Source: Macrostomum hystrix (Eukaryota > Animalia > Platyhelminthes). From it: DNA of 64,000 bases. Below, piece by piece: positions 18,253 to 49,994 of this stretch. The notes below the pieces were generated by a model. The model had not been told where the DNA came from and ran no database searches. It worked only from the letters and a program-made list of their open reading frames with translations. Position 1 is the first letter of the stretch; the number at the start of each line of letters is the position of its first letter. The DNA lies in assembly GCA_950097015.1 (NCBI GenBank), contig CATNEN010000039.1:5084001-5148000 (forward strand), given 5' to 3'. Both the position numbers and the translations under genes were made by a program.

Positions 18253-18445
18253 GTCTGTTGCAACTGCTGCTTTTATGGTAGGCTGGGTCTGTTGCAACTG
18301 CTGCTTCTATGGTAGGCTGGGTCTGTTGCAACTGCTGCTTCTATGGTAGGCTGGGTCTGTTGCAACTGCTGCTTCTATGGTAGGCTGGGTCTGTTGCAAC
18401 TGCTGCTTCTATGGTAGGCTGGGTCTGTTGCAACTGCTGCTTCAT
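18253..18445. repeat. 34-bp minisatellite x~5.7
   Basis: Unit GTCTGTTGCAACTGCTGCTTCTATGGTAGGCTGG. Confidence 0.92.
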
Positions 18446-18454
18446 ATGAGCATG

Positions 18455-21100
18455 GAGACAGGGGAGAGTTGAGGCAGGGGAGAGGTGAGGCAGGGGAGAG
18501 TTGAGGCAGGGGAGAGGTGAGGCAGGGGAGATTTGAGGCAGGGGAGAGTTGAGGCAGGGGAGAGGTGAGGCAGGGGAGAGGTGAGGCAGGGGAGAGTTGA
18601 GGCTGGGGAGAGGTGAGGCAGGGGAGATTTGAGGCAGGGGAGAGTTGAGGCTGGGGAGAGGTGAGGCAGGGGAGATTTGAGGCAGGGGAGAGTTGAGGCT
18701 GGGGAGATTTGAGGCAGGGGAGAGGTGAGGCAGGGGAGATTTGAGGCAGGGGAGAGGTGAGGCAGGGGAGATTTGAGGCAGGGGAGAGTTGAGGCTGGGG
18801 AGATTTGAGGCAGGGGAGAGGTGAGGCAGGGGAGATTTGAGGCAGGGGAGATTTGAGGCAGGGGAGAGGTGAGGCAGGGGAGAGGTGAGGCAGGGGAGAT
18901 TTGAGGCAGGGGAGAGTTGAGGCTGGGGAGAGGTGAGGCAGGGGAGATTTGAGGCAGGGGAGAGTTGAGGCTGAGGAGAGGTGAGGCAGGGGAGAGGTGA
19001 GGCAGGGGAGATTTGAGGCAGGGGAGATTTGAGGCAGGGGAGAGGTGAGGCAGGGGAGAGTTGAGGCTGGGGAGAGGTGAGGCAGGGGAGATTTGAGGCA
19101 GGGGAGAGTTGAGGCAGGGGAGAGGTGAGGCAGGGGAGATTTGAGGCAGGGGAGATTTGAGGCAGGGGAGAGTTGAGGCAGGGGAGATTTGAGGCTGGGG
19201 AGAGGTGAGGCAGGGGAGAGGTGAGGCAGGGGAGAGGTGAGGCAGGGGAGATTTGAGGCTGGGGAGAGGTGAGGCAGGGGAGAGGTGAGGCAGGGGAGAT
19301 TTGAGGCAGGGGAGAGATGAGGCAGGGGAGAGTTGAGGCAGGGGAGATTTGAGGCAGGGGAGATTTGAGGCAGGGGAGAGGTGAGGCAGGGGAGATTTGA
19401 GGCAGGGGAGAGGTGAGGCAGGGGAGATTTGAGGCAGGGGAGAGTTGAGGCAGGGGAGATTTGAGGCAGGGGAGATTTGAGGCAGGGGAGAGGTGAGGCA
19501 GGGGAGAGGTGAGGCAGGGGAGATTTGAGGCAGGGGAGAGGTGAGGCAGAGGAGAGATGAGGCAGGGGAGAGTTGAGGCAGGGGAGATTTGAGGCAGGGG
19601 AGAGGTGAGGCAGGGGAGATTTGAGGCAGGGGAGAGGTGAGGCAGGGGAGAGGTGAGGCAGGGGAGATTTGAGGCAGGGGAGAGGTGAGGCAGGGGAGAG
19701 GTGAGGCAGGGGAGAGGTGAGGCAGGGGAGAGGTGAGGCAGGGGAGAGTTGAGGCTGGGGAGAGGTGAGGCAGGGGAGATTTGAGGCAGGGGAGAGTTGA
19801 GGCTGGGGAGAGGTGAGGCAGGGGAGATTTGAGGCAGGGGAGAGTTGAGGCTGGGGAGATTTGAGGCAGGGGAGAGGTGAGGCAGGGGAGATTTGAGGCA
19901 GGGGAGAGGTGAGGCAGGGGAGATTTGAGGCAGGGGAGAGTTGAGGCTGGGGAGATTTGAGGCAGGGGAGAGGTGAGGCAGGGGAGATTTGAGGCAGGGG
20001 AGATTTGAGGCAGGGGAGAGGTGAGGCAGGGGAGAGGTGAGGCAGGGGAGATTTGAGGCAGGGGAGAGTTGAGGCTGGGGAGAGGTGAGGCAGGGGAGAT
20101 TTGAGGCAGGGGAGAGTTGAGGCTGAGGAGAGGTGAGGCAGGGGAGAGGTGAGGCAGGGGAGATTTGAGGCAGGGGAGATTTGAGGCAGGGGAGAGGTGA
20201 GGCAGGGGAGAGTTGAGGCTGGGGAGAGGTGAGGCAGGGGAGATTTGAGGCAGGGGAGAGTTGAGGCAGGGGAGAGGTGAGGCAGGGGAGATTTGAGGCA
20301 GGGGAGATTTGAGGCAGGGGAGAGTTGAGGCAGGGGAGATTTGAGGCTGGGGAGAGGTGAGGCAGGGGAGAGGTGAGGCAGGGGAGAGGTGAGGCAGGGG
20401 AGATTTGAGGCTGGGGAGAGGTGAGGCAGGGGAGAGGTGAGGCAGGGGAGATTTGAGGCAGGGGAGAGATGAGGCAGGGGAGAGTTGAGGCAGGGGAGAT
20501 TTGAGGCAGGGGAGATTTGAGGCAGGGGAGAGGTGAGGCAGGGGAGATTTGAGGCAGGGGAGAGGTGAGGCAGGGGAGATTTGAGGCAGGGGAGAGTTGA
20601 GGCAGGGGAGATTTGAGGCAGGGGAGATTTGAGGCAGGGGAGAGGTGAGGCAGGGGAGAGGTGAGGCAGGGGAGATTTGAGGCAGGGGAGAGGTGAGGCA
20701 GAGGAGAGATGAGGCAGGGGAGAGTTGAGGCAGGGGAGATTTGAGGCAGGGGAGAGGTGAGGCAGGGGAGATTTGAGGCAGGGGAGAGGTGAGGCAGGGG
20801 AGAGGTGAGGCAGGGGAGATTTGAGGCAGGGGAGAGGTGAGGCAGGGGAGAGGTGAGGCAGGGGAGAGGTGAGGCAGGGGAGAGATGAGGCAGGGGAGAG
20901 TTGAGGCAGGGGAGATTTGAGGCAGGGGAGAGGTGAGGCAGGGGAGAGTTGAGGCAGGGGAGAGGTGAGGCAGGGGAGAGGTGAGGCAGGGGAGAGTTGA
21001 GGCAGGGGAGAGGTGAGGCAGGGGAGAGGTGAGGCAGGGGAGAGGTGAGGCAGGGGAGAGGTGAGGCAGGGGAGAGTTGAGGCAGGGGAGAGACTAGGCA
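18455..21100. repeat. 16-bp G-rich satellite (GAGGCAGGGGAGAKKT) x~165 with a 1152-bp higher-order duplication
   Basis: Rare variants CTGAGG (18971/20123) and GCAGA (19546/20698) recur exactly 1152 bp apart. Confidence 0.97.
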
Positions 21101-21779
21101 GGGTCCAGCAGGCGTTGAAAGTCACAGGGGACCAGCATTTGGGACTTTAAAGTGCGGCACCTGGCCCGCGGGCCGCAGGTTGTCGATCAGTGAGTTGAGT
21201 GGACTCGGCGGCATCAGATGGTACAACTGGCATTAGATAAGGTTAGAAAAAGGACGAGTAAGCAAGAAAAAAAAAGTACAAATGCAAAAATTAGACTATA
21301 TTTATGAGTCCACACTCTAGCACTGGGCTAATAATAAAATAACATGACAATGTCAACTCGAGCCGCGCTATCAGAAGTCACAAAGTTGACAAAATAGCAT
21401 GAAATCGTGACGCCGGGCACGTAGACGAACATGTACACCTGATATCATGCTCATATGAAACATTCATGCTAGATGTGCAAGAATTTAATCCGAATACTAC
21501 TTTACTAGAAAAAAGTAGTGTGCCGAAATGCAGTTTTTTGTCTTTAGTTTAACATTTTCATTCAAATCCTGGCTAGCAGAGAAGCAGTTTATAACAGAAA
21601 TACCGCTATTTTTAAAGATGTATGTAAGATGTAAAGATGTAAAGATTAAAGATGTATTAAAGATGTAAAGATCAAAACTAATGTAGAATTGAAAGTTGCA
21701 AAATATTCTAAAGCACCTGCGGGCACTGCAACTGCATGTATAGCTCTAATATGAATGAATTATTCTAAGGGGATTATGG

Positions 21780-22027: not shown

Positions 22028-25000
22028 TCAGTTTTTAATGTCAGTCTGCTGCGATGCCTTCGCGGCAGCGGAGGTCGCCGAAGATGCGGCTGCAGCGGCC
22101 GCCTTCTTAGCCTCCTTCGCCGCCTTCTTAGCCTCGCTCATGGCCCGCCTGGCCTCGATAGCTGCCTGCTTGGCCTGCTGTGCGGCATCCTTGATCTCCT
22201 TGACTGACTCAGCGGTGACCGTTGGCTGTTCGACGGTTCTTGATGCTGAAGTAGCGGTGGCAGCAGCAGCAGCAGGATCAGCGGAACTGAGCTCGCTGAA
22301 GTCACTCGCCTCTCTAATCAGCTCACGGCCCTTTTAAGTGAATGAAAAATGCCGATTTAGAAATTTCAACTAGGGACATCAAAAAGGGTGTTAGATACAG
22401 CCTGAGATGAACTGGGGGTGTTAGATACAGCCTGAGATGAACAGGGAGGGTGTTAGATACAGCCTGAGATGAACAGGGAGGGTGTTAGATACAGCCTGAG
22501 ATGAACAGGGAGGGTGTTAGATACAGCCTGAGATGAACAGGGAGGGTGTTAGATACAGCCTGAGATGAACAGGGAGGGTGTTAGATACAGCCTGAGATGA
22601 ACAGGGAGGGTGTTAGATACAGCCTGAGATGAACAGGGAGGGTGTTAGATACAGCCTGAGATGAACAGGGAGGGTGTTAGATACAGCCTGAGATGAACAG
22701 GGAGGGTGTTAGATACAGCCTGAGATGAACAGGGAGGGTGTTAGATACAGCCTGAGATGAACAGGGAGGGTGTTAGATACAGCCTGAGATGAACAGGGAG
22801 GGTGTTAGATACAGCCTGAGATGAACAGGGAGGGTGTTAGATACAGCCTGAGATGAACAGGGAGGGTGTTAGATACAGCCCAAGAGGGTGTTAAAATAAT
22901 GCCAACGAAGCTATAAAGTGGATCAGAAACTGACCTCGCAGTTGCTTTTGACAGCTTCAGTTTCAGCGCACTCATCATCGTCGTCGGATTCGGCAACTGT
23001 GGTTGAGGGCGCAGTACCGATGGTGTCACCGTGGCTGTTGCACTTCGGACAGTCTGGCCGGCGAAGCCGAAGGACGACCTGCAGCAGGTTGTCCTCGCTG
23101 GCCTCCAAGTACACGGGCAGAGCTGAGCGAAAATTCAGCGTGCTAACAATGCGATGCGGACAGCTGTCGGTGGCGGGGAAGTGCAGGCTGCACACGCCAT
23201 GCTTCGATTGCACTTTAAGGCCTGGGAAAGCTTGCTGGGCTCGCTGGAAGTCTAACCTGGTGGTCAGCAGAAGCTGCGGCACCATCAGCTGCGGGCAGGC
23301 GAATGTGTTTGCGGCAGAGTGAGACTGGGTGAGAGTAGATTGAGACTGGGTGAGTTAGTGGATTAATACTGGGTGAGTTAGCAGACTGAGACTGGGTGAG
23401 AGTAGAGTGAGACTGGGTGAGAGTAGACTGAGACTTGGTGAGAGTAGAGTGAGACCGGGTGAGAGTACAGTGAGACCGGGTGAGAGTACAGTGAGACCGG
23501 GTGAGAGTACAGTGATAGTGGGTGAGTGTACAGTGAGAGTGGGTGAGAGTACAGTGAGAGTGGATGAGAGTACAGTGAGAGTGGATGAGAGTGGGTGAGA
23601 GTACAGTGAGAGTACAGTGAGACCGGGTGAGAGTACAGTGAGACCGGGTGAGAGTACAGTGATAGTGGGTGAGTGTACAGTGAGAGTGCAGTGAGAGTGG
23701 GTGAGAGTACAGTGAGACTGGGTGAGAGTACAGTGAGAGTGGGTGAGAGTACAGTGAGAGTGGGTGAGAGTAAGTGAGAGTAGAGTGAGACCGGGTGAGA
23801 GTGCAGTGAGAGTGGGTGAGAGTACAGTGAGAGTGGGTGAGAAGCTAGGTGCAGAGGAGAGCAGCGGGCAGAGCATAGTTAGATATGGAGAGCGGAGCGG
23901 CACTAAAAATTACATCCATGCCCTGACGGCCCATGGACTTGACGTAGGCGGTGCCCTCGTTTGGCCCAGTGGAGCGCAGGAAGGCGGCGTAGAACATCTG
24001 GACGCTGCGTTCGGAGGCCCGCTTGGCACTGATTCGCCACCGATTGCACCACATGGCCTGCGCCTCGACCTGATCGGCCCGCTGCTGCTGCTGCTGCTGT
24101 GAAATCGCAGCCGCCAGCTGCCGATGTACCAACAGATCTGCGTACCTCCTGATTGGCGAAGTGAAGTGCGTGTAGACTGGGAACTGCAGGGCGAAGTGTC
24201 GCCAAGAATCCGGCTCCGGGTGGTAGCCGATGCAGATGTACTCGGCCAAAGACATCTGCATGACGGCCAGGGTGGCCGCGAAGCTGCGAAAATGCACGTC
24301 GTCGGACTGCTCAGCGAGGAAGTTGTTCAGCCGCAGCATCGTCTCGGTGGCGGATGCGGCCGGCTTCTTGGCTGAGCTGCCTGCGGCTGGACAGTCGGGA
24401 GGGAAGCTGGATGGGCTAGTCTGTCAGGTGCTGGATGGGCTAGTCTATCAGGTGCTGGATGGGATAGTTTGTCAGGTGCTGGATGGGATAGTTTGTCAGG
24501 TGCTGGATGGGATAGTTTGTCAGGTGCTGGATGGGCTAGTCTATCAGGTGCTGGATGGGATAGTTTGTCAGGTGCTGGATGGGCTAGTCTATCAGGTGCT
24601 GGATGGGATAGTTTGTCAGGTGCTGGATGGGCTAGTCTATCAGGTGCTGGATGGGATAGTTTGTCAGGTGCTGGATGGGATAGTCTGTCAGGTGCTGGAT
24701 GGGCTAGTCTGTCAGGTGCTGGATGGGATAGTCTGTCAGGTGCTGGATGGGCTAGTCTGTCAGGTGCTGGATGGGATAGTCTGTCAGGTGCTGGATGGGC
24801 TAGCCTGTCAGGTGCTGGATGGGATAGTCTGTCAGGTGCTGGATGGGATAGTCTGTCAGGTGCTGGATGGGATAGTCTGTCAGGTGCTGGATGGGCTAGC
24901 CTGTCAGGTGCTGGATGGGATAGTCTGTCAAGTGATGGATGGGAGACTGTCAGGTGTTGGAATTGGGACAGCACTCACACTGTACAATAAACTTTGACAC

Positions 25001-28000
25001 CCCGGTGTCGACGGCACCACCAGACTTCTCCAAGGCGTCCCGCGCCAGCGACGTCAGTGTGTCAGCCAGGGCCAGCGGATCCTTCGGCGGCGGATGCCGA
25101 CGCAGCAGGGCGACCTCCGGCGCGCTTTTGACCAGCGTCTCGGCTGCCGCTACGTTGGCCTTGAGCATCCACTCTTCGACTAGCTGGTGCGAGCTCTCGG
25201 CCTCCTCCTCCTTCATCAGCTGGGGCGCGCCCTCCGGCCCATCGGGACAGGTGAATTGCAGCTTCTTGGCGACGCTGAAGCCGAAAGCGCCGTTGGCCAG
25301 GCGTTGCTTGCGAAATTTCTTAGCCAAATTTTGTAGCTGACGCACCGCCGTGCGCACCTGGCGACCCGTGAACGGCTGCGACACCGACTGCGGCAGGAAT
25401 TCGTCTGACTCAAGCAGCTGCTCAGCCTCCTCGTACGATAGGCGACAGCAGGGCCTGATGATGGACTTGGCGAATCTGGGTAATAACCGTAAAATACAAA
25501 TATAATAATAATATAAGAAATATGAATTAATAATTGCAGAAGGGCTGCAGGTTTTGGCACATCATTCGGTGCCTCTTGACCCTCTGCCAGCGAGGAGGCT
25601 TTTCTGCCCATTTCAGTGACTCCTGAGCAGCTCACGCAGGTGTGTACAGCTGCCCTGACTTTCTCATCGTCAGGCAGTGAACACTTTCACTGTGCCTTGG
25701 AGGTTGGCCCTCAAGGGCGGAAAATGCGCCACAGATGAATGTGGCCTCGCCCCGGAATCGAGCTCAGGGACCTTGGTGCGAGAGGCAAACGCGTTAACCG
25801 CTCTGCCACCGACCCCATGGTAATAACGGGATTGCATGGTATAATAAGGGATTTTTTACTTTTAATCCTAGGATAACCCCAATTCACCGGTATGACGCAA
25901 CATCGCCCTTTGTATCGATCTGGAAGATGACAGAGAAGGTCAGCTTCTCCTCGCCTGGCAGCAGTGAGCAGTAGCCGTTGCTGAGAGTCTCTGGCAGCAT
26001 TGGGATCACGCGCTGAACCAGATAAACTGAGGTGGAGCGGCGACGGGCTTCGCGATCGAGGGCCGACTCGGGCGGCACAAAATGCGACACGTCAGCAATG
26101 TGCACACCGACCTAGGCAACGAGTTGGTATTGGCTTATGACTTCGTCTGGGGTTGCTGTCTAGCCAATCAAATCATCTGGGGTTGCTGTCTAGCCAATCA
26201 AATCATCTGGGGTTGCTGTCTAGCCATGAAATCATGAAATGAAATGAAATCATCTGGATTGTCGCCTACCTATCTGTTTTAAGAAACTCGAAAGCAAAAA
26301 ACACGAAGATCACCTCGAAGCAGCCGTTGCCAAGCGGTTTTACATGCAACGCATCGTCCAGATCCCTAGCCGTTGCAGGATCAATAGAGACAACGCATCT
26401 GTCTGTGAAATCCTCGCGATCTTTCCGATCACCGCGACTTATGTAGAATGTTTTCGGCACGTCGGCCAGAGCTGACAGTGGGAACGGCCGCTCGTCGATG
26501 CCAGTCTCAACTAGAATGGCCTGGGTGGCGCCCTCAATTGTAGCCAAATCTGTGTTCATTGGCAACACCTCGGCAACGGGGCGAGACAGATGACTCGGCC
26601 AGTCTACCATCTGAGGGAATTTAGGATTGCAGGGGAGAGCGAAGCTGGTCATTTAATGGGTTATTATACTTTCAGTTTCATGTTTGGTAGGTCATTGGCC
26701 TCTTTTTCAGTTGAATTTTGGTGTAGCCTAGTGGTTAGGACTCACGACTCGAAGGTCGGGGGTTCGATTGCCGACTCCACTGGATCAATTTGTGTCTTTT
26801 AGAAAGACACTTAACTCTGCATTGCGTCAGTTCACCCAGCTGTTATGATGGGTACCTATGGTAATGGGTACCAGCATCAGCTGGGGTAATTGAGGGTTGG
26901 TGTGACATTCTCACAGTCCAAGGACTGACAGCCGTGCACAGCCATTAGGGGCAGGTTTATTCAATAAATTATTAATTAATTATTATGTTAGGTGCGTCAT
27001 TAAAGTCAAACCTTCACAGCCACAGTGTAGGTCTCCCCAGCCAGACCCTTGGCCAGGTTCTGCGTCAGCTGGCGTTTAACCTCGAGTCCCATGAACAGCG
27101 GATGCACCGGCACCAGCATGAGGGGTGCCCGACGATCGCGCGGTTTGAACAGGGCCACCCGGCCGCTGCGATGAAGCGACAGGCTGCCGACGAAGCATTT
27201 GTTGTTGAAGGACGATACAATACGAACTACTTCGCCGGACATGACTAGGCCGGCCTGGCACAGCGAGTTGATCTGCTCGATGCTCATGAAGGAGGAGTCA
27301 ATGTCCACGGGTTCGGAAACCAGCTCCGAGAGCAGCTCCGACCGGTGTTTGAGCTCGGACTCTACTGTTGGCCCGTTGAGTCCAAAAGTCCAGTGGCGCA
27401 CTGGTAGCAGGTGCACCGCCACCTGATCTCGGTCAAGGGCTCGATTCATGGCCTCGCCTGATCGAATGGCAACCGGCATGCCCTGAGGGTTGCAGGTTAA
27501 ACCGGCCCTGATGACACGGCTATTTAGAGTGAGGTCGCTGTTTGAAGTGAGGTGGCTGTTTGGAGTGAGGTGGCTGTTTGGAGTGAGGTGGCTGTTTGAA
27601 GTGAGGTGGCTGTATGGAGAGAGGTGGCTGTATGGAGAGAGGTGGCTGTTTGGAATGAGGTGGCTTTATGAAGTGAGGTGGCTGTTTGGAGTGAGGTGGC
27701 AGTTTGAAGTGAGGTGGCTGTATGGAGTGAGGTGGCTGTATGGAGTGAGGTGGCTGTATGGAGAAAGGTGGCTGTTTGGAATGAGGTGGCTGTAAAGAGT
27801 GAGGTTGCTGTTTGGAGTGAGGTTGCAGTATGAAGTGAGGTGGCTGTTTGGAGTGAGGTTGCAGTATAAAGTGAGGTGGCTGTTTGGATTGAGGTTGTCA
27901 GTGATCTTTACAGAGAAAATAAACATTCGCGTATCAGACTAGATATTTTCAGATAAAACTTAAACTTTAAACTATTCGAGTAAAAATGTCCTACCTGCCA

Positions 28001-29905
28001 CTTGCAGATAGCCAGATTTCCAGGACTAATTACGCTGAAGTAGCAGAGCAGGACGTGATTAGCGCGCATGCCTTTGCCGAGCATCCTGGCGTCCCAGTGG
28101 TCCTTAAAATGCTGTTTGTTAAGATTTAAGTTCTAAGATTAAATTTAGCGATTATAAAAAACTGGAACTGCTTAAATCATTGACTTTTAGTGTAACAAAA
28201 GATAGTAAATAAGCAAACCAGAACAAATACAACCTTAAAAAATCGAAATCTAATTTTAAACAGCAAAGCTCAATGTCATAAAATCGCTGGTACCATTTGA
28301 ACTGCTTACACAAGACAAAACGAATTGTCGTCTCTTTTGTTGCAGCCTCTTACTCATGCGAGACTGAAAGTTACAATATCGTAACCGGACCAAATATACT
28401 CTCTTTGAATACTTAGGCTTGGTGGCTTTGTGGAGGGACGTCGCTGTAAGGGAGTAAGGTGGGAGTTGAGGAGTGAGGCTGCTGTTTGGAGAGAGGTGGT
28501 TGTGTGGAGTCAATGGCTATGTGGAGTGAGGTGGTTGTAGGGGAGTGAGGTGGTTGAAGGGGAGTGAGGTGGTTGAAGGGGAGTGAGGTGGTTTTAGGGG
28601 AGTGATGTAATTGTCTGGAAAGCGTTTGTAGGGATGGATAGCAAGTAATATCTGCTTTGCTAAGGAATATTTGTCTTCTTTTTCCTTAGATATAATTCAG
28701 GTCAGACTGCTTACAACGACCATTCCGGGCACGGTGAGGCCGGCGATGTGCGCCAGTTTCTGCTCTCGGAGCCGCATCTCAGCGGAGCTTGGTTCCGGTG
28801 CCAGTTCTATGAGTCGATGGTCGGCATCAATGGAACTGATCACCTCCTCGGCGTGACGCATGTCGGCCTCTTCGGCATCTTCTTCGGCAGCATCGGAGGC
28901 CGTGTTCAGCGATGACGATCCAATAGCGGATGGAGAGGTCAAAACTTCAGGTGATGCAGAAATTGCTTCTGAAGTCACCTGTTTGTATTTATTGGGGAAC
29001 AAATATTTTGGCCAATATTTTACTCAGGTAGATGCATTGAAAAGATGCATTGTCAATCCGAACAAAAATGATCTGTTTGACAAGTGCAGCAAAGACGTGA
29101 CAGAGCGGATATAATAAAAATAATAACTGCAAGAGGACTGTGACAACATATGGGCAATTCTGCACACAATTGAGCACACACGGACACATACGGAACACAG
29201 GCACACACACAGGTGTGCTCATCTACCCAGGACTTTCTTATCGTCAGGCAGTGTACACTCTCACTGTGCCTTGGAGGTTGGCCCTTAAGGGCGAAAAATT
29301 GTACGACAAGCCCCCAAGCCTTCTCTGCGGCTGCACCCCTAAATGATTGTGGCCTCACCGCGGAATCGGATGTGACAGCACTGGCAATGTTTTCACGCTA
29401 TGAAACAGCAATCGTGATGACAAAAACAGTTGACAGTGCTTCATTGCTTTATGGACACAAACATTCTCTCCTCTAACCAATGGACTAAAACTCCGTTGCA
29501 AAACAAGTAGATCCAACGCACCGCTGACGCAGTTTTAGACATAGCGTCGAATTTCGCTTCGGATAAAATTGAAGATCTTCCACGCCAGTCGAACACAAAT
29601 CGGCTAACCCTAGCCATCAGGTTTTTCACACCCCCTCTAACGGAACCGTCCGTAGCCATTAGCTTTCGCTGTTGCTGCTGACTCGGCTCCTGCTGGCACA
29701 GTCCCTGACGCACAGCTGCCAATCGAATATTTCGATTCAGCGCCGACGGCTGCGTTGACTTCGGTCGGCGACCGCCGCCGCCGCTGTGCCCTCCCGTGGC
29801 TGAGGTGACGAGACTGCGCCAGCCTAGCACAGTGAGGGCCCGACACTGCCGCTGCTGCTGCTGCTGCTGCTGATGACGGCATTGGCAAGCGACACGCAAT
29901 AGCAT
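22028..29905 (-). CDS. DIS3L2: DIS3L2-like RNase II/RNB family 3'-5' exoribonuclease, divergent paralogue B
   Basis: Exons 29905-29609, 28978-28715, 28111-27995, 27482-27012, 26610-26314, 26111-25888, 25475-~25010, ~24380-23914, 23288-22935, 22330-22028. Motifs NRALDRDQVAVHLLP (CSD1), [15 protein letters not shown] (catalytic), [47 protein letters not shown]. No PIN domain seen. Attachment of the first two exons is inferred from phase compatibility, and one junction (~25010/24380) is uncertain. Confidence 0.85.
22385..22892. repeat. 32-bp minisatellite (GGGTGTTAGATACAGCCTGAGATGAACAGGGA) x~15
   Basis: Near-perfect tandem array in an intron. Confidence 0.96.
23320..23842. repeat. 21-bp minisatellite (GTGAGACCGGGTGAGAGTACA)
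   Basis: Degenerate tandem array in an intron. Confidence 0.92.
24405..24955. repeat. 24-bp minisatellite (GCTGGATGGGMTAGTCTGTCAGGT) x~22
   Basis: Tandem array in an intron; source of the QVLDGIVC and HPAPDRLS ORFs. Confidence 0.96.
25520..25812 (-). mobile_element. tRNA-derived SINE family A copy
   Basis: Head GGTGGCAGAGCGGTTAACGCG..GCTCGATTCC; body matches the other A copies. Confidence 0.85.
26719..26985 (+). mobile_element. tRNA-derived SINE family B copy
   Basis: A box TAGCCTAGTGG, B box GGTTCGATTGCC; body GACACTTAACTCTGCATTGC..CACCCAGCTGTTA..ATGGGTACC shared with copies at 38.4, 51.7 and 57.8 kb; (ATT)n-type tail. Confidence 0.85.
27525..27897. repeat. 18-bp minisatellite (GAGTGAGGTGGCTGTWTG); related short array at ~28470-28605
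   Basis: Tandem periodicity. Confidence 0.93.
29150..29370 (-). mobile_element. SINE family A copy (truncated)
   Basis: CGTCAGGCAGTGTACACT..CCTTGGAGGTTGGCCCTTAAGGG body. Confidence 0.8.
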
Positions 29906-30069
29906 AGTTTGATTCTGCAAAAATTTGCAACGTTAATGATTTTATTAAATTAGTTTAGTTAGTAACACATTAGGAAGAGACTGGACAAGGGCTCGGCAAC
30001 CAAATTTATATCGAGGCCAAATATTTTTAACAACGACATCGGCATCATATCGATGGGAAGATATGGGAA

Positions 30070-30762
30070 AGATGAGACAGGAGATATAGATATGGGGAGG
30101 GGATGAGACATAAGAGATGAGACGGGAGAATTGAGACACTGGAGGTGAGACGGGAGAATTGAGACACCGGAGGTGAGACGGGAGATATGAAACACAGGAG
30201 GTGAGACGGGAGATATGAGACATAGGAGGTGGGACAGGAGATATGAGACATGGGAGGTGAGACGGGAGATATGAGACATAGGAGGTGGGACAGGAGATAT
30301 GAGACATGGGAGGTGAGACGGGAGATATGAGACATAGGAGGTGAGACGGGAGATATGAGACATAGGAGGTGAGACGGGAGATATGAGACATAGGAGGTGA
30401 GACGGGAGATATGAGACATAGGAGGTGAGACGGGAGATATGAGACACAGGAGGTGAGACGGGAGATATGAAACACAGGAGGTGAGACGGGAGATATGAGA
30501 CATAGGAGGTGAGACGGGAGATATGAGACACAGGAGGTGAGACGGGAGACATGAGACATGGGAGGTGAGACGGGAGATATGAGACATAGCAGGTGAGACG
30601 GGAGATATGAAACACAGGAGGTGAGCCGGGAGATATGAAACACAGGAGGTGAGACAGGAGATATGAGACATGGGAGGTGAGACGGGAGACATGAGACATG
30701 GGAGGTGAGACGGGAGTTTTGAGACACGGGAGGTGAGACGGGAGATATGAAACACAGGAGGT
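30070..30762. repeat. 28-bp purine-rich minisatellite (GAGATATGAGACATAGGAGGTGAGACGG)
   Basis: Tandem array between ATG7 and DIS3L2-like B. Confidence 0.95.
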
Positions 30763-31424
30763 TTCCGACCCCTTGCTAGACAATAGTGCACAACAATACA
30801 CCTGTGCTTCAATTGCAAGCTACTGCTACAGTTGAAATAAGCAAATTTACGCCAAGAAAGAGTATTTCAAATAAAAAACGTGCTTAGCAAATCAAGAGGC
30901 AAGTATCTATTTATCGTACCTGGAAATCACACAAGCGATTATTAAAAAACTTTACTGTTATCAACGCAAGATTCAATAACAATGGCAGCTTAGATAATAT
31001 TTTGTAGCTAATCAGAATCAAGAAATGGAATATAAAATTCTTACATGCGTTTGCCGTCACAAATTTGCTGATGTAATAACGATTGTTTCGGTGACAAACA
31101 ATGAAACGCAAAAATGGCACACTACTTTATGTTAGTAGAAAGCGCAGTTATAACATCGATATAATTATTTGTTATAATTTACAATGAACTAAATTTTTAT
31201 TTACAGCAAACAAAACTTATTATGCAATTATAAATTATTTGAGAAATAATATTAACAACGTTATAAATGGATCAAAGGGTATTCGTGAATTCTTGAATAA
31301 GAAATGTAAAAAATGTTAAATAATACTATATTTCTAAATAAAAAATCAATAGCTAGTCCACTAAAAAATTCAGGAACCACAAGTCACTCATTTGTTAGTT
31401 TAGGAAACACCCACTATACCATCA

Positions 31425-34700: not shown

Positions 34701-35559
34701 AAGACGCAATCCCGGGCTGGCAGCGACTGAGCCATGGCATCGGCCAGCGAAAGCAAACGAACAGAGCTTGCAGTCTGCAAATTGAAGATCGACAGTCTAT
34801 ACTCAATAGTGCTCAAATAAAAAATTTGCCAGGAGTCCCTACTCACATCCGCCGAATCAGCCAGTCCGCAGACAACAAAATACGGGCACCGGCCAGAGCT
34901 AACAAAGAACTGCAACACCTGTTCGGCTAGAACCTCCACGGCTGTTGTAGCCATAGCCTCAGCTAAACTGACGTTGCTTAGCAACACGGCCGATGCTTCA
35001 GGCGGAAATGCCAGCACCGGCATGCATAGCCAATAGTAGAAGTGATATTTCTTCAGGTCAACATAGGAAAGAATAGTGAAGTCTAGCAGGCTGGCGGGCT
35101 GATGAAGAGCTTCGCCTGACCGGATGCTGGAGAGCAACTGGGAGCCGAGCTGGTCAACGAAGGCCTGCTTGTCTAACGCCTGAAAGATACGGGATTTTGA
35201 TTTTGAGATTTATATACTAAATTGTGTACTCAAGTGTGCTCAAATGTGTACTCAGTTCGCACCTTAAAGGCGTCCAGGCTATTTAGATTCCACAGCCGAC
35301 CGGCTGGCGCGAACGATCTGGCCGACAATTCCGCAACGGCGGTCGCATCGAAGGCGTTGTACTCGAAGGCCAGACGGCACGGCAGCCTGTCCGCATCGCC
35401 GATGCTGTACAGGCCGCGTATCGGCACCGGCTCCTCGGACAGCTTCAACTCCTCCAGCTTCAGCTTGCAGAATCGATGCCAGAAGGCCACGCTGATGCTC
35501 GACTCGAAGGCTATAAACTGCAGCTGCTGCTGCTGCTGACCGATTGTCAGGTCAGACAT
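31786..35559 (-). CDS. ATG7: Ubiquitin-like modifier-activating enzyme ATG7
   Basis: Exons 35559-35263, 35179-34847, 34774-34587, 33645-33123, 32505-31786. Motifs [77 protein letters not shown], catalytic [28 protein letters not shown]. Confidence 0.97.
32550..32925. repeat. 21/42-bp minisatellite (TTGTGTACTTTTACCTTCCTATTTTGTACTTCTGACTCCCGA)
   Basis: Tandem array in an ATG7 intron. Confidence 0.93.
33690..34555. repeat. 21-bp minisatellite (ACTCAGAACTGRCAWRCTGAC) with a 294-bp higher-order duplication
   Basis: Variant GACACACGGA recurs at 33951 and 34245. Confidence 0.94.
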
Positions 35560-40227: not shown

Positions 40228-40259
<32 letters not shown>

Positions 40260-41183: not shown

Positions 41184-41319
41184 GTACAGTGAGTGCGAAG
41201 ACAAGCTGCAATGAACATCCGGGGGGGGGGGTATTCGATATTAGAAATAGCTACGTTAACAGTCAACAGGCGGTGGTGATAAGATGAGGCAGGGAAGATA
41301 TGCAATTGGGGGAAATAAT

Positions 41320-43964: not shown

Positions 43965-46900
43965 TCACTCTCTAGCTTCATTGCCGGAGGCTTCGTTGCA
44001 GAGCTCACAAGCTGGCGGCTTAATTAGCAGCGTCAGCTTAGTCGGGTCGTCTTTATCTAGACAGCTGGACACGATGACATCAATGCCGGACATTGGTGAC
44101 AGGGTCAGCAAGTGACTAGGCGAATTGCAGCCCTTGAAATGCAGAGTCAGCTGGCCGCAGGACTGTCAAATTGTCACACGTGAATTTAATGGGTAAACAG
44201 CGTGAGTAGCTATGAGTAGAATAAACTATATTAGATTCTTCGTCATCTAATTAGATCATTAGACCAATAATATCTGACCTGCACAGCGCCAGACTTAAAC
44301 TCGTGCGAGCGCCGCAGCAAATGAGACTGCTTATCCATGTAGAGCCTGCGCACCAGCCCGCAGTGAGTCAGCAGAATGTCAGCCGCCTTGTCTAACACGC
44401 CGATGACAACGGCGACATCTTCTAATGGACCGTTGGCAACTAGGAAGGCGGCGTAGTACAGATCGATGCTGCGCTCACCGGCCTCTTTGGCGTCCTTCTT
44501 CTTCTTGTTGCACACCTGCGCCTGGCTAGTCAGGCTTTCAACTGTCTCCTGCTGTAGGGTGCGAGGGTTGAGTGGGATCAGGTATGGTGTAGGGGGGATC
44601 AGGTATGGTGTAGGGTGTGGGATCAGGTATGGTGTTGAGTGTGGGATCAGGTATGGTGTTGAGTGTGGGATCAGGTATGGAGTTGGGTGTGGGATCAGGT
44701 ATAGTGTTAGATGTGGGATCAGGTATGGTTTTGGGTGTGGGATCAGGTATGGTGTTAGGTATGGGTCAGGTATGGTGTTAGGTGTGGGATCAGGTATGGT
44801 GTTAGGTATGGGTCAGGTATGGTGTTAGGTGTGGGATCAGGTATGGTGTTAGGTGTGGGATCAGGTATGGTGTTAGGTATGGGTCAGGTATGGTGTTATG
44901 TATGGGTCAGGTATGGTGTTAGGTATGGGTCAGGTATGGTGTTATGTATGGGTCAGGTATGGTGTTATGTATGGGTCAGGTATGGTGTTAGGTATGGGTC
45001 AGGTATGGTGTTATGTATGGGTCAGGTATGGTGTTAGGTGTGGGATCAGGTATGGTGTTAGGTATGGGTCAGGTATGGTGTTAGGTATGGGTCAGGTATG
45101 GTGTTATGTATGGGTCAGGTATGGTGTTAGGTATGGGTCAGGTATGGTGTTAGGTATGGAATCAGGTATGGTGTTAGGTATGGGTCAGGTATGGTGTTAG
45201 GTGTGGGATCAGGTATGGTGTTAGGTGTGGGATCAGGTATGGTGTTAGGTATGGGTCAGGTATGGTGTTATGTATGGGTCAGGTATGGTGTTAGGTGTGG
45301 GATCAGGTATGGCGCATTTTTCTCACCAAATCCGCAACGGACTCGTCCATCTCAACGCCTTCATCGGAGCACAGGGCGGCGCACAGCTGCCTGTGAACAA
45401 TGACATCAGCGTAGCGTCGAATCGGTGAAGTGAAATGAGTGTACAGAGGCACATTCAAAGCATAGTGACGCCACAGATCCGGGTGCTTGGCCGAGCCGAT
45501 GCAGAAGTACTTGGCCAGTTGCATCTGCTTAGCGCACAGACTCAGCAGGCAGAGATGCTGCTCGGGGTCTAGAGCTTTGGAGGCCTGTTATCGGGGAGGG
45601 TACGAATATATATGGTCATATCTATGGTTTAACGACTTCGCTTAATATGATTTAGCTAATTACACCATACGACTCCGAACGTCACTTAGGTCATCATGAA
45701 ACATCACTCAGAATATCACTCAGGTTATTATAGAACATCACTCAGGTGATCATGGGACATCACTCAGGTGATCATGGAACATCACTCAGGTGATGATAAA
45801 GAATCACTCAGAATTCACTCAGGTGATCACAATCCTATCTCCCTCACCTGTCCAAGACTAGCCTGCAGCTGGCCAGACGTGGTGACATCCAACTGGACGC
45901 CCAACGCAGCCGAAGTCTTCTTCAAGGCCTGCAAGGCCCGGTCCGACGGCGGCTGGTGTCGCCGAAGGAATGCCAGGTCCGGTGCGGAGTCGCGCAGTTT
46001 GTGCGCCACGGAACAGTTGGCCAAGAGCATGAGCTCCTCAATCATTCGATTGCTGTCGCGCAGCTCGTAGACTGAGAAGGCAATCGGCGATCGCGCCTCC
46101 TCGGTGCCGGAGCAATCATCGCCCAGGCGAAATGTCAGCCGGGGCTGATCGATGCGCAGGGCGCCGTCTTCGAAGCGACGCCGGCGAAGCATCACGGCCA
46201 GGCGGTGAAGAGACCGGACGCTGTCAGCTACGGACTGCACAGTGTGCGGAGCTTCAACGCGTGCGCCCGCCCGACGCAGGTCCGACATGCAGCTGGCGTC
46301 GGCGACGGCAGAGACTTTGTCAACAATCTGGAGTCAACATTGACCAATCTCGGTTATTTTGACTGCCAATCATCTACCTGCCAATAATCAACACGCCAAT
46401 CATCTACCTGTCAATCATCTAGATCTGTCAATCATCTAGATCTGTCAATCATCTAGATCTGTCAATTATCTGGATCTGTCAATCATCTAGATCTGTCAAT
46501 CATCTAGATCTGTCAATCATCTAGATATGTCAATCATCTAGATATGTCAATCATCTAGCAGTCAATCAATCCACCTTCCAAATACTTCAGCCTCACCTCG
46601 TCGTCGCCGCTGAGATCAGCCGTCGGGTCCTGCATATCGGAATGGCCCTCGATGAAGTGCTGCGCATGCTGATAGCTGAGCTGGCAGCAGGAGCGAATGA
46701 TAGACTTGCCGAACCAGGTTGAGCGCACCTCCCCTGACTCTGAATTAATGCGCCAGACAACACTGAATGCCAATTTGTCTTCGCGGGGATTCAACGAGCA
46801 CAGACTCTCGCATAGGCGCCTAGGCAGCATCGGGTAGGCTCGCTGCACCAGGTAGGTGGTGGTTGCTCGCAGACGGGCAGCGGCGTCGACGCGAGTGTCG

Positions 46901-49900
46901 GGACGTACATAGTGGGACACGTCCGCGATGTGAACACCGACCTGCGGTTTAAAGCAGAATCACAGATATATATGACAGGTATGAAGACAAATGAAAGGTA
47001 TGAGAATGACTGACAGGTATGAGAATGAATGACAGGTATGAGAATGAATTACAGGTATGAAGATGAATGACAGGTATGAAGATAATGACAGGTATGATGA
47101 TAATGACAGGTATGAAGATAATGACAGGTATAATGATAATGACAGGTATGAAGATAATGACAGGTATAAAGATAATGACAGGTATGAAGATAAATGACAG
47201 GTATGAAGATAAATGACAGGTATGAAGATAATGACAGGTATGAAGATAAATGACAGGTATGAAGATAATGACAGGTATGAAGATAAATGACAGGTATGAA
47301 GATGATGACAGGTATGAAGATAATGACAGGTGTGAAGATAATGACAGGTATGAATGACAGGTATGACAGGTATGATGATAAATGACAGGCAAAAAGATAA
47401 ATGACAGGCGCGGAAAAATTAAACTGAAAATCAAAGCTCTCAAGAATACCTCACAGTCGCCAGAGCCGTCCTTTAACTCCCTATAGTGAACAGCGTCGTC
47501 CAAATCTCTGGCAGTTTCCGGGTCCACGGTAAACACGCAGTACAGCGACGGGTCGCGAAAGTCCCGCCGTCTAGCCGCACCGGAACTGTCGCCATCAACG
47601 CCGGCGGTGGCGGCATCAACCTCAGCTAGAACATCGGGTTCGAAGTCTTCAGCGTCGATGCCGTGATGCTCCAGAATGACTTTGGTCTCCAATTCCAAAT
47701 CAATTTTGCCGGCAATGCGATTGCCCAAATGGCGACAGATTCTGGCCTGAGGCATTCGACATTCGGGTCGCCAATCCGCTGCCAATTCGGCTACGAATAG
47801 AGTGCGCTCAAAGTCGCCAGGTCGGTTGGCGAACATTGGTGGCAGATCGGTGCGCGGCACCAGACAGCGCGGCTGGCGCGAGTCGAGCGGAGAGAATAAC
47901 ACCATTGGCTGCGGGGTTTTGGGGGTGGGCGATGAGAATAGCACCATTGGCTGCTTGGGTTTTGGGGTGGGCGATGAGAATAGCACCATTGGCTGCTTGG
48001 GTTTTGGGGTGGGCGAAGAGAATAGCAACATTGGCTGCGAGGGTTTGGGTGGGCGATGAGAATAGCACCATTGGCTGCTTGGGTTTTGGGGTGGGCGATA
48101 AGAATAGCACCATTGGCTGCTTGGGTTTTGGGGTGGGCGAAGAGAATAGCAACATTGGCTGCTGGGTTTTTGGGTGGTTAAAGAGAATAGCACCATTGGC
48201 TGCGTGGTTATAAGGTGGGTGAAGAAAATAGCCCCATTAGCTGCGTGCTTAGGGGGTGGGTGAAGAGAATAGCCCTATTGGCTGTGTGGTTTTGGGGTTG
48301 GTCAAAGTATAGCCCTGTTGCTTGTGGGGCATTCTGGTGCTTAGTGGGAGAGAGAGGTGATTAAGCACCCTTGGCTGCGAGGTTCAAGGATGTCCCACCT
48401 GTCCACCACTGCTGCTGGGCTTCACGAAGCCAACGAACCGTCGGTTGGCCAATTGCCGCACAATGGCCACAACTTGACCAACACGCTGTACCCTGTCCAA
48501 CGGCAGCGGATTGCAGGGATCGGCGTTAGACTTCAACATGTCAGCAATGCCATCCACGTCAACGCCATCACGCTGCTGGCTGCTGATTTTTACGCCGGGA
48601 AACAATTCATGGAATGTGGCCTGGCCAGACGCCAGGACCGACTCGACAGTGGGCGGGACCTGCTGCTGCTTCTTCGATGGCGTTGATTCGCTGTCAAGCA
48701 AACCGCTGGAGACGCCACTAGGATCTAGTCCGACAACGCGCCAATTGGCTACCTAAGTTGACAATGTAGAAACGCACAATTGACATTAGAATTCCTGCTG
48801 CATCCCATTCCCATCAGACTGATCTCAAAATAATCCTCATTAAATTCACTCACAGGTTTAATTCTAACTGCCACCTCGTCGTCATTAAGTGCCCGATTGC
48901 GATCAACCAGGCTGGTAATGAACACATCGGAATCGCCGTTCGGATGGCTGACAAAGGCCTCTTCAAAGTTGCGCTGACTGATTCGCACCTGGCCGATGAT
49001 TAGCTGGCCAGCCGATACTCCGGCTGACACCGCCTGACATTTGCGATTGATTGCGGGCAGTGCTCTTCAAATATTTCCATTGCTTAGTTACTGTCAGTGT
49101 CTGCTAATACCCCAACAACCAGGCCTGTCAGTGGGTGTCTGCTGATGCCCTAACAACCAGGCCTGTCAGTGGGTGTCTGCTGATGCCCTAACAACCAGGC
49201 CGGTCACCTCTTGGTAATCCAGACTGTCTATTCAGTTACAGGATACAGATAAACGAAACCAAACACTAATTCGTCAAGCGCCTCACCTCCGGGGTCAGGT
49301 AGGCCACAAACTGAGGCGCTGCGGCCGAAGCAGAGATGTTGGCAGCGCCGGGAGCTCCGTTGAACTGCTGCCGAGATCCGGCATGACCAGCGCGATGACC
49401 GTATGATGGTCCGTATCCTCCACTCCCAAACTGCTGCTGCAGCTGCCGCTGCTGCTGCTGCTGCAGATGGCCATGCTGACCCCCTCCTCGACGGCCTCCA
49501 CGCTTCCCAACCCCACTGCCAGGATGATGATAATGTTGCTGCTGTTGCTGGCTGTGATGGTGATGACCCGGATGAAAATGCGACTGCTGGTGATGACCAC
49601 CGCTTGCTCGATGATGCTGCTGCTGATGGTGTTGCTGGTAGCCAGAGGCTCCAAGCGGTGTCAGGGGCGGGTAGCCAGCAGCAGTTGCCTGTCCCAGGTG
49701 ATTGCCCATCATCTGCTGCTGATGCGCCGGCGGCGGTTGCTGGGCAACGGACGATGCGACGCCCGACTGCAGCTGAGTCTGGGCGCCCGGCAGCGGCGGT
49801 CCCTGAAGCTGGGCGCCGGCGCCTTCAGGCGGACAGCCCTGACGGAACACCAATGGAACAGCGGCCGCGGACGAAGATGACGTTGACACATTGGAAGCAT

Positions 49901-49994
49901 TGTTGGAAGCTGAATTGCTGCCGCACGGCTGCTGCTGTGGAGATGCTGACTGTGTCTGGCTACTTACGTTAGTAGCATCTGATGTGTCTGACAT
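43965..49994 (-). CDS. DIS3L2: DIS3-like exonuclease 2, paralogue A (more canonical)
   Basis: Exons 49994-49287, 49033-48854, 48752-48399, 47908-47450, 46941-46597, 46327-45848, 45584-45327, 44551-44279, 44162-43965. Motifs [122 protein letters not shown]. No PIN domain. Confidence 0.93.
44570..45312. repeat. 22/24-bp minisatellite (TCAGGTATGGTGTTAGGTRTGGG)
   Basis: Tandem array filling an intron. Confidence 0.94.
46360..46570. repeat. 17-bp minisatellite (CTGTCAATCATCTAGAT)
   Basis: Tandem array in an intron. Confidence 0.9.
46972..47408. repeat. 18-19-bp minisatellite (ATGACAGGTATGAAGATA)
   Basis: Tandem array in an intron. Confidence 0.92.
47892..48330. repeat. 42-bp minisatellite derived from a splice acceptor / exon start
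   Basis: The minus-strand unit ATCGCCCACCCCAAAACCCAAGCAG|CCAATGGTGCTATTCTC overlaps the start of DIS3L2-A exon 4. Confidence 0.88.

What the first reader, a model, noticed from the sequence alone, without database searches (positions are those of the whole stretch)
22028..29905. Divergent DIS3L2 paralogue with a mitochondrial-presequence-like N-terminus: a possible animal mitochondrial RNase II
Seen: the first exon encodes MLLRVACQCRHQ7RQCRALTVLGWRSLVTSAT..., with no Asp/Glu in the first 72 residues, 9 Arg, and an R-S-L-V-T-S segment resembling an R-2/R-3 processing site. It can be spliced in phase 0 through 28978-28715 and 28111-27995 into a CSD1-CSD2-RNB-S1 enzyme with an intact DPATARDLDD motif. 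Established: DIS3L2 is cytoplasmic; well-studied animal mitochondria degrade RNA with PNPase-SUV3, whereas yeast uses the RNase II enzyme Dss1. Inference: a local DIS3L2 duplicate may have been retargeted to mitochondria, convergently recreating a Dss1-like degradosome nuclease.
Basis: partly seen in the sequence, partly recalled or inferred. Interest (0 to 1): 0.85.

Follow-up and report, generated by a model that had tools for sequence, protein, structure and literature searches.

The report
Divergent flatworm DIS3L2 copy, presequence-like leader
This Macrostomum flatworm has an extra, fast-evolving but catalytically intact copy of the RNA-degrading enzyme DIS3L2 with a leader that resembles a mitochondrial import signal, and its genome shows no trace of the usual animal mitochondrial RNA-degrading pair PNPase and SUV3, so this copy may have taken over that job, though import is not shown.

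Summary
On the minus strand, 29905-22028, lies a 10-exon gene of about 1105 codons for a CSD1-CSD2-RNB-S1 exoribonuclease with an intact DPATARDLDD motif. A more conserved DIS3L2 gene (copy B, 49994-44243) lies 14 kb upstream on the same strand.

They are supported by three transcript-based Macrostomum lignano gene models of 1162 aa. These start MLWRAP... (here MLLRVA...). They carry the exon-2 peptide at 73% identity and run straight into the exon-3 peptide with the same spacing.

The leader has no Asp or Glu for 72 residues here and 81 in M. lignano. It has 10-11 Arg against 0-1 Lys, although its sequence has diverged. Its amphipathicity is ordinary, and no targeting predictor could be run.

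New here: six-frame HMM searches of the 220-Mb assembly find no PNPase core and no SUV3, while the mitochondrial RNA polymerase scores E 9.5e-92 by the same method.

The fold is DIS3L2-type, not Dss1-type. I put mitochondrial retargeting, as a helicase-independent stand-in for PNPase-SUV3, at about 0.45. A non-mitochondrial specialised paralogue is at about 0.40.

The parts
29522..29905 (-). Copy A exon 1 (128 codons): leader MLLRVACQCRH..., acid-free for 72 residues; donor GCG|GTGCGT at 29521
   Evidence: (global alignment to the M. lignano N-terminus scores 76, against 24 +/- 8 for shuffles)
29906..29926 (-). Acceptor-like tttttgcag followed by AAT CAA ACT, in frame and 12 nt upstream of the ATG: a possible spliced-leader acceptor (inferred)
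   Evidence: Read. That Macrostomum trans-splices comes from PMC5730564 and from earlier scan notes. Not tested with reads.
28979..29521 (-). Intron 1, holding a copy of a dispersed repeat (29255-29286) that is also in intron 6
28715..28978 (-). Copy A exon 2 (88 codons): acidic, with a highly conserved helical segment EEADMRHAEEVISSIDADHRLIELAPEPSSAEMRLREQKLAHIAGLTVPGM
   Evidence: 73% identity to P0003 residues 167-241, E 5e-35; unique in the genome; helices 183-234 in the orthologue model
27995..28111 (-). Copy A exon 3 (39 codons): start of CSD1
   Evidence: 85% identity to P0003 residues 244-282, directly after the exon-2 homologue
27012..27482 (-). Copy A exon 4: rest of CSD1 and most of CSD2
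26314..26610 (-). Copy A exon 5: end of CSD2 and start of RNB with the catalytic motif DPATARDLDD
25888..26111 (-). Copy A exon 6: RNB core ([12 protein letters not shown]...), ending in phase 2
   Evidence: (RNB, E 2.6e-31)
25001..25475 (-). Copy A exon 7: RNB middle part. The donor is uncertain, and the following intron is a minisatellite.
23914..24342 (-). Copy A exon 8: end of RNB ([18 protein letters not shown]) and start of S1. The acceptor is uncertain.
   Evidence: (human DIS3L2, E 1.8e-27)
22935..23288 (-). Copy A exon 9: S1-type barrel and acidic tail; donor GAG|GTCAGT
22028..22330 (-). Copy A last exon: Ala/Lys-rich C-terminal helix and stop codon (22030-22028)
   Evidence: helix 1109-1161 in the orthologue
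44243..49994 (-). Copy B: the more conserved DIS3L2 gene. It has an acidic, Gln/His-rich N-terminus ([10 protein letters not shown]...), a canonical CSD1 and the motif [10 protein letters not shown].

Best explanation
Copy A is a real, single, catalytically competent 3'-5' exoribonuclease gene of the DIS3L2 family. It is known so far only from the genus Macrostomum and evolves fast. Its product carries a disordered N-terminal extension of about 190 residues. The first 70-80 residues most likely act as a mitochondrial matrix presequence. After import the enzyme would degrade mitochondrial RNA from the 3' end on its own, as DIS3L2 and RNase R enzymes do on structured RNA. It would thereby stand in for the PNPase-SUV3 degradosome, whose genes are not detectable in this genome. 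Shown here: the gene model, family, fold, intact active site, genus-level conservation of the leader's composition, and non-detection of PNPase and SUV3. Inferred: import, cleavage of the leader, and mitochondrial substrates.
For: Gene and family:
- RNB matches on four exons and DPATARDLDD read.
- All invariant family residues are kept in the orthologue.
- The best solved-structure matches are DIS3L2, and every named database hit is DIS3L2.
- The AlphaFold model of the orthologue matches mouse DIS3L2 4PMW at E 6e-56, TM 0.89.

One gene:
- Three RNA-seq-based M. lignano models of 1162 aa run leader, exon-2 peptide, exon-3 peptide and nuclease with the same spacing as here.
- Those models derive from transcripts (PMC5730564).
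- Exon 1 is colinear with their N-terminus at z 6.5.

Presequence character:
- There are 0 Asp/Glu in the first 72 residues here and 81 in M. lignano, against a median first acidic position of 6 in 115 homologues.
- Arg:Lys is 10:1 here and 11:0 in M. lignano, net charge +11 in both.
- Composition switches sharply to acidic downstream.
- Copies B and C9 lack such a leader.

Need for a replacement:
- The PNPase models hit only S1 or KH domains of other genes.
- RNase_PH hits six loci, the number of exosome ring subunits.
- Four SUV3 Pfam models give nothing credible.
- POLRMT is found at E 9.5e-92 by the same method.
Against: - No targeting predictor, RNA reads or localisation data were available.
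- The hydrophobic moment of the leader (0.44-0.53) is no higher than in ordinary DIS3L2 N-termini.
- The leader holds a poly-Gln run (poly-Asn in M. lignano) and Gly-Arg stretches that also fit a basic RNA-binding or nucleolar disordered region.
- The R-10-like site RSLVTSATGG is not conserved in M. lignano.
- Absence of PNPase and SUV3 rests on six-frame HMM searches of one assembly.
- Other nucleases could serve the mitochondria instead.
- Flatworms outside Macrostomum show no A-type copy in the databases searched, and their PNPase and SUV3 status was not tested. If they also lack the pair, another solution must exist.
Confidence: 0.45

Rival explanations
1. Copy A is a specialised cytoplasmic or nuclear/nucleolar DIS3L2 paralogue, for example tissue-, germline- or stem-cell-specific. 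Its basic, Gly/Arg/Ser-rich disordered N-terminus would be an RNA-binding or partner-binding region, not an import signal.
For: - Long low-complexity N-terminal extensions are common in invertebrate DIS3L2 proteins; copy B has about 240 residues and mollusc proteins reach 1100-1250 aa.
- Amphipathicity is ordinary.
- Gly-Arg stretches and poly-Gln or poly-Asn runs are atypical of presequences.
- 3 of 115 homologues also have an acid-free start of 40 residues or more.
- The genome has expanded RNB genes generally: three DIS3L2-like genes and six HELZ2-type ones.
Against: - Complete exclusion of Asp/Glu over 72-81 residues, with Arg strongly favoured over Lys, is kept in two species despite low identity.
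- The start is MLLR / MLWR.
- This reading leaves the apparent lack of PNPase and SUV3 unexplained.
Confidence: 0.4
2. Copy A is a decaying or catalytically idle duplicate, a pseudonuclease or RNA-binding protein like fungal Ssd1, on a long branch.
For: Very long branch in both trees. CSD1 and the C-terminal domain fall below Pfam thresholds.
Against: - All ten exons are open with canonical splice sites.
- All invariant RNB residues are kept.
- Identity to M. lignano is 73-91% across the domains.
- Three transcribed copies exist in M. lignano.
- The predicted fold is confident.
Confidence: 0.07
3. Exons 1-2 (29905-28697) form a separate small gene, and the nuclease starts downstream at the Met at 28084.
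For: The frame past the exon-2 donor stops after five codons. Exon 3 contains an in-frame ATG.
Against: - The M. lignano transcript-based models join the exon-2 and exon-3 peptides with identical spacing in three loci.
- No small homologous protein of 85-270 aa exists in the database.
- The exon-3 peptide upstream of that Met (HFKDHWDAR) is conserved.
Confidence: 0.03

Closest known systems
DIS3L2 (human/mouse; PDB 4PMW, 8E27-8E2A)
   Same: CSD1-CSD2-RNB-S1 architecture without a PIN domain. It gives the best sequence and fold matches. Catalytic and RNA-channel residues are kept.
   Different: About 30% identity and a very long branch. CSD1 and the C-terminal domain fall below Pfam thresholds. 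Copy A has a 190-residue leader with presequence-like composition, a conserved acidic two-helix segment, and an Ala/Lys-rich C-terminal helix. DIS3L2 is cytoplasmic (established knowledge).
Dss1 of the yeast mtEXO degradosome (PDB 6F3H, 6F4A) and kinetoplastid DSS1
   Same: An RNase II-family 3'-5' exoribonuclease proposed to act in mitochondria of an organism without PNPase (PMC9181182).
   Different: Dss1 replaces the cold-shock domains with beta-barrel, WH and HTH domains and needs SUV3 (PMC5758563). Here the CSDs are present, Dss1 is a poor fold match (TM 0.49), and SUV3 is not detected. Any similarity would be convergent in role, not in build.
Plant RNR1 (mitochondrial/chloroplast RNase R homologue)
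   Same: A CSD1-CSD2-RNB-S1 enzyme sent to organelles by an N-terminal transit peptide (PMC9181182).
   Different: RNR1 is of bacterial RNase R descent and works beside PNPase. Copy A descends from eukaryotic DIS3L2 and sits in a genome without detectable PNPase.
PNPase-SUV3 mitochondrial degradosome of animals
   Same: The role proposed for copy A.
   Different: It is a phosphorolytic RNase PH-type ring plus a helicase. Neither gene was found in this genome.

Membership tests
RNase II / RNB superfamily | RNB domain scoring above the Pfam threshold | tested here: met
   PF00773 on four exons at 29.7-109.6 bits (cut-off 29.3)
RNase II / RNB superfamily | Four catalytic aspartates (DPxxARDLDD) and the [11 protein letters not shown] motif | tested here: met
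   read both motifs in the window. One search shows the invariant columns kept in the orthologue.
DIS3L2 subfamily | CSD1-CSD2-RNB-S1 without a PIN domain | tested here: met
   the orthologue model matches 4PMW at TM 0.89, rmsd 3.8. There is no PIN match.
DIS3L2 subfamily | Closest sequence relatives are DIS3L2 rather than DIS3, DIS3L or RNase R | tested here: met
   DIS3L2 at 1.8e-27, against DIS3 at 1e-14 to 1e-16 and DIS3L at 1e-11. In one search all named hits are DIS3L2.
DIS3L2 subfamily | Branches inside the metazoan DIS3L2 clade | tested here: inconclusive
   (PMSF model) places it inside a 98* metazoan clade. (LG+G4) places it outside as a long branch of 1.89.
DIS3L2 subfamily | Oligo-U preference and cytoplasmic location | not testable with these tools
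   Needs biochemistry and imaging
Dss1 / mtEXO | Beta-barrel, WH and HTH domains in place of the cold-shock domains | tested here: not met
   cold-shock barrels are present. Dss1 (6F3H) scores only E 1.9e-18, TM 0.49.
Dss1 / mtEXO | SUV3 helicase partner encoded in the genome | tested here: not met
   four SUV3 Pfam models give no credible match. The best hit is an Mtr4/Ski2-like helicase.
Mitochondrial matrix presequence | N-terminal stretch free of acidic residues, Arg-rich and net positive | tested here: met
   72 residues here and 81 in M. lignano without Asp/Glu, 10-11 Arg, net +11 in both species
Mitochondrial matrix presequence | Amphipathic helix | tested here: inconclusive
   maximum hydrophobic moment 0.44-0.53, equal to the family median. 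models the region as disordered.
Mitochondrial matrix presequence | MPP/MIP cleavage motif | tested here: inconclusive
   an R-10-like RSLVTSATGG|H occurs here but has no counterpart at the aligned place in M. lignano. The motif carries little information.
Mitochondrial matrix presequence | Positive call by TargetP, MitoFates or DeepLoc; experimental import | not testable with these tools
   No predictor is installed and no localisation data are available.

The most novel reading that the evidence does not exclude
An animal lineage (Macrostomum, perhaps more flatworms) has lost the PNPase-SUV3 mitochondrial degradosome. It has replaced it with a retargeted, helicase-independent DIS3L2 paralogue. 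This would be the first RNase II-family mitochondrial RNA-decay enzyme in Metazoa, arising independently of fungal and kinetoplastid Dss1 and of plant RNR1.
Probability: 0.35. Interest if true: 0.88.

Novelty: new variant of a known kind. Interest (0 to 1): 0.72.

Why it matters
Reviews state that metazoan mitochondria degrade RNA with PNPase-SUV3 and that RNase II-type enzymes do this job only in fungi, kinetoplastids and (beside PNPase) plants (PMC9181182, PMC5758563). A flatworm without detectable PNPT1 and SUPV3L1 is unexpected in itself. A DIS3L2 copy with an import-like leader gives a concrete, testable candidate for the replacement. M. lignano has working transgenesis and RNAi (PMC5730564), so localisation and function can be tested directly. 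If confirmed, it would show that the core of mitochondrial RNA decay can be swapped in animals. It would also be a natural case of a cytoplasmic RNA-surveillance nuclease being retargeted.

Tried and rejected
- Exon 1 searched alone found no homologues of 85-270 aa.
- BLASTP of exon 1 against the orthologue found only PSALNRNI/PTALNRQI. A global alignment with shuffles was needed to show colinearity.
- The CSD-exon search of the representative library returned only two frameshifted M. lignano models.
- The Atlas search on the leader gave nothing.
- A paper search for Mlig034482 gave nothing. Paper searches for flatworm PNPT1 or SUPV3L1 also gave nothing relevant.
- The high-ranking unnamed proteins P0009-P0016, whose N-termini looked MTS-like, were considered as A-type orthologues. 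They were rejected because they group with tunicate DIS3L2.
- The weak Suv3_C_1 hit at C25 was inspected and dismissed as chance-like.
- The DEXQc_Suv3 hit at C11 is an Mtr4/Ski2-type helicase.
- The RNB gene at C38:25.53 Mb was considered as an alternative mitochondrial candidate, but it is HELZ2-like.
- The duplication could not be dated, because copy A's place in the trees is unstable.
- The joined spliced protein of this window was never built or searched. Exons were searched one by one by reference, and the M. lignano orthologue P0003 served as the full-length stand-in.
Full report
**What is there**

The window comes from a 220-Mb, 42-contig flatworm assembly (C39:5084001-5148000). Earlier scan notes and the closest database proteins identify the animal as a Macrostomum species other than M. 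lignano.

The minus strand carries two RNB-domain genes. Copy A, the finding, runs from the ATG at 29905 to the stop at 22030-22028. Copy B runs from about 49994 to 44243. They are not strictly adjacent. An ATG7 gene (about 35137-31786) and one further gene (about 41204-39861) lie between them on the same strand.

**Gene model of copy A**

Pfam finds RNB on four exons and weak CSD1/CSD2 signals on the exon at 27482-27012. I placed the splice junctions using the M. lignano orthologue as a guide together with GT-AG sites. The ten exons are:

| Exon | Coordinates (minus strand) | Note |
|---|---|---|
| 1 | 29905-29522 | leader |
| 2 | 28978-28715 | conserved acidic segment |
| 3 | 28111-27995 | start of CSD1 |
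| 4 | 27482-27012 | CSD1/CSD2 |
| 5 | 26610-26314 | DPATARDLDD |
| 6 | 26111-25888 | RNB core, ends in phase 2 |
| 7 | 25475-about 25001 | donor uncertain |
| 8 | about 24342-23914 | acceptor uncertain |
| 9 | 23288-22935 | S1 barrel, acidic tail |
| 10 | 22330-22028 | C-terminal helix and stop |

The total is 3318 nt, or 1105 codons plus the stop. Only the 7/8 junction is uncertain. It flanks a minisatellite intron and falls in a loop that is disordered in the orthologue.

The active-site motifs [21 protein letters not shown] and [18 protein letters not shown] are intact. In a 47-sequence alignment the orthologue keeps every invariant family residue.

**Do exons 1 and 2 belong to the nuclease?**

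The test therefore rests on comparison with M. lignano.

- A search with the CSD exon found two frameshifted M. lignano models.
- A search with the N-terminal 200 residues of one of them found PAA66103.1 (P0003, BOX15_Mlig034482g1, 1162 aa).
- Two further M. lignano loci give 1162-aa proteins with the same N-terminus. Older independent models also join the same parts.
- The BOX15 models derive from RNA-seq and transcript assemblies that were cut at spliced-leader and poly(A) sites (PMC5730564).
- P0003 maps colinearly onto exons 2 to 9 at 54-91% identity.
- Exon 2 matches residues 167-241 (73% identity, E 5e-35). Exon 3 matches residues 244-282 (85% identity, E 2e-26). The join reads GM-VV-HFKDHW here and GM-TA-NFKDHW in M. 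lignano, with identical spacing.
- Exon 1 is too diverged for BLASTP. Its global alignment to P0003 residues 1-166 scores 76, against 24 +/- 8 for 500 shuffles. Shared landmarks are MLLRV/MLWRA, a Gly run, PSALNRNI/PTALNRQI, GGxKxL...W, and SKTAS at the proposed exon end.
- Intron 1 holds a dispersed repeat that is also found in intron 6.
- No small protein homologous to exon 1 exists in the database.

I regard the reading of exons 1-2 as a separate two-exon gene as very unlikely.

**Family**

- Sequence matches to solved structures are best for DIS3L2: 1.8e-27, against 1e-14 to 1e-16 for DIS3 and 1e-11 for DIS3L. Dss1 does not appear.
- All named database relatives are DIS3L2, at about 31-35% identity. 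None outside Macrostomum is closer.
- The AlphaFold model of P0003 (pTM 0.72) shows residues 1-189 disordered and two helices at 183-234, which is the conserved part of exon 2. CSD1, CSD2, RNB and an S1 barrel follow, then a long C-terminal helix.
- Foldseek ranks mouse and human DIS3L2 first (E 6e-56, TM 0.89). Dss1 ranks far below (E 1.9e-18, TM 0.49).

Copy B scores higher than copy A against oyster, primate and tapeworm DIS3L2 and has a recognisable CSD1. One of its exons groups with parasitic-flatworm DIS3L2 (support 94). A third, B-like copy lies on C9.

Copy A and P0003 form a 100* clade on a very long branch. Its position is inside metazoan DIS3L2 with the site-heterogeneous model but outside with LG+G4. 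The age of the duplication is therefore open.

**The leader**

| Feature | This species | M. lignano |
|---|---|---|
| Residues before the first Asp/Glu | 72 | 81 |
| Arg | 10 | 11 |
| Lys | 1 | 0 |
| Net charge | +11 | +11 |

After this stretch the sequence turns acidic. Among 115 DIS3L2 homologues the median position of the first acidic residue is 6, and only three reach 40. The composition is kept in both species although the sequence has drifted. That is how presequences usually evolve.

Against this, the maximum hydrophobic moment (0.44-0.53) is ordinary. The leader contains a poly-Gln run (poly-Asn in M. lignano) and Gly-Arg stretches. The R-10-like RSLVTSATGG|H site is not conserved in M. 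lignano. No targeting predictor was available.

An acceptor-like tttttgcag sits 12 nt upstream of the ATG and is in frame with it. Macrostomum trans-splices widely, and earlier scan notes report leader-donated AUGs in this genome. The mRNA may therefore start there, but this is inference.

**PNPase and SUV3**

I ran six-frame HMM searches of the whole assembly.

- The PNPase helical domain gave no match.
- The full PNPase model hit only S1 or KH domains of other genes, such as a DHX8-like gene, plus one weak RNase PH exon at C30. That exon is the best RNase_PH locus of the exosome type.
- RNase_PH itself hits six loci, the number of exosome ring subunits. None has the PNPase arrangement of two cores plus KH and S1.
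- SUV3_C, Suv3_N and Suv3_C_1 give nothing credible.
- DEXQc_Suv3 finds only an Mtr4/Ski2-type helicase at 26 bits.
- The same method finds the mitochondrial RNA polymerase at E 9.5e-92 and RNB exons down to 29 bits.

The pair is therefore absent or unrecognisably diverged in this assembly. No paper found in the library mentions this for flatworms. Reviews state that metazoa use mtPNPase and that DSS1 enzymes serve fungi and kinetoplastids, which lack it (PMC9181182; PMC5758563).

**Reading**

The firm part is that copy A is an intact, genus-conserved, divergent DIS3L2 paralogue with a long leader. Its orthologues in M. lignano are transcribed.

The mitochondrial part is an inference resting on two independent lines: the leader's conserved composition and the missing PNPase-SUV3 pair. 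DIS3L2-type enzymes have been solved bound to RNA hairpins (PDB 8E28-8E2A, listed). From my own knowledge, they unwind structured RNA without a helicase, so loss of both partners would be tolerable. The enzyme would then work like Dss1 in role but not in build or partnership.

I put this reading at about 0.45. The main rival, a non-mitochondrial specialised paralogue with a basic disordered N-terminus, is at about 0.40. An idle duplicate is at 0.07, and a separate upstream gene at 0.03.

**Limits**

- No reads were examined.
- The joined spliced protein of this window was not searched. Exons were searched one by one, and P0003 stood in for the full length.
- Absence of PNPase and SUV3 was tested in one assembly only.
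- M. lignano and other flatworm genomes could not be searched for PNPT1 or SUPV3L1 with the tools at hand.

Noticed in passing
whole genome G000: No PNPase core and no SUV3 helicase are detectable by six-frame HMM search, while POLRMT is found at E 9.5e-92. RNase_PH hits exactly six loci, the exosome ring number. The apparent loss of the animal mitochondrial degradosome deserves its own check in M. lignano and other flatworms.
   Followed up: partly
window 44243-49994 (-): Copy B is the more conserved DIS3L2 gene. It has a Gln/His-rich, acidic-start N-terminus of about 240 residues ([10 protein letters not shown]...) and the motif [10 protein letters not shown].
   Followed up: partly
G000:C9:1614600-1617400 (L027 6620-9400, L009): A third DIS3L2-like gene, 71% identical to copy B over one exon. 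Its catalytic motif reads DKELAQDLDD, with Pro changed to Lys and Arg to Gln, so its activity may be altered.
   Followed up: no
G000:C2:930664, C2:936905, C2:961850, C39:396770, C38:29150605 (L001-L005); C38:25532189 (L011, L026): Five intronless ORFs of about 1250-1294 aa combine a HELZ2-type OB fold with an RNB domain. A sixth, intron-containing HELZ2-like RNB gene also exists. Three of these genes cluster within 32 kb on C2. This is an expansion of HELZ2-type nucleases.
   Followed up: partly
window 31786-35137 (-): An ATG7 (autophagy E1-like) gene lies between the two DIS3L2 copies. Another gene with Gln/His runs lies at 39861-41204 (-).
   Followed up: no
window 18375-21125; 22400-22900; 23355-23903; 24327-24974; 27490-27926; 29945-30818; 41256-42734: Long minisatellites fill introns and intergenic DNA and give spurious ORFs of up to 916 aa (SPASPLPCLTSPLPHL...). 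Strong GC skew runs across 14-24 kb.
   Followed up: no
window 29255-29286 and 25681-25712 (-); also L026 about 5800-6070: A dispersed repeat (…AAGGGCCAACCTCCAAGGCACAGTGAGAGTGT…) occurs in introns 1 and 6 of copy A and at another locus. A tRNA-like stretch lies in intron 4 (about 26700-26800), but ARAGORN calls no tRNA there.
   Followed up: partly
window 51085-51750 (-): An ORF resembles a DJ-1/PfpI-family protein (…VVLPGGLAGAKAF…AAICAASIALESH…).
   Followed up: no
window 28715-28870 (-), P0003 residues 190-241: The C-terminal 50 residues of exon 2 are about 95% identical between the two Macrostomum species, more conserved than the catalytic domain. They are predicted as two helices and have no counterpart elsewhere in the genome or in Pfam, which suggests a partner-binding element.
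   Followed up: partly
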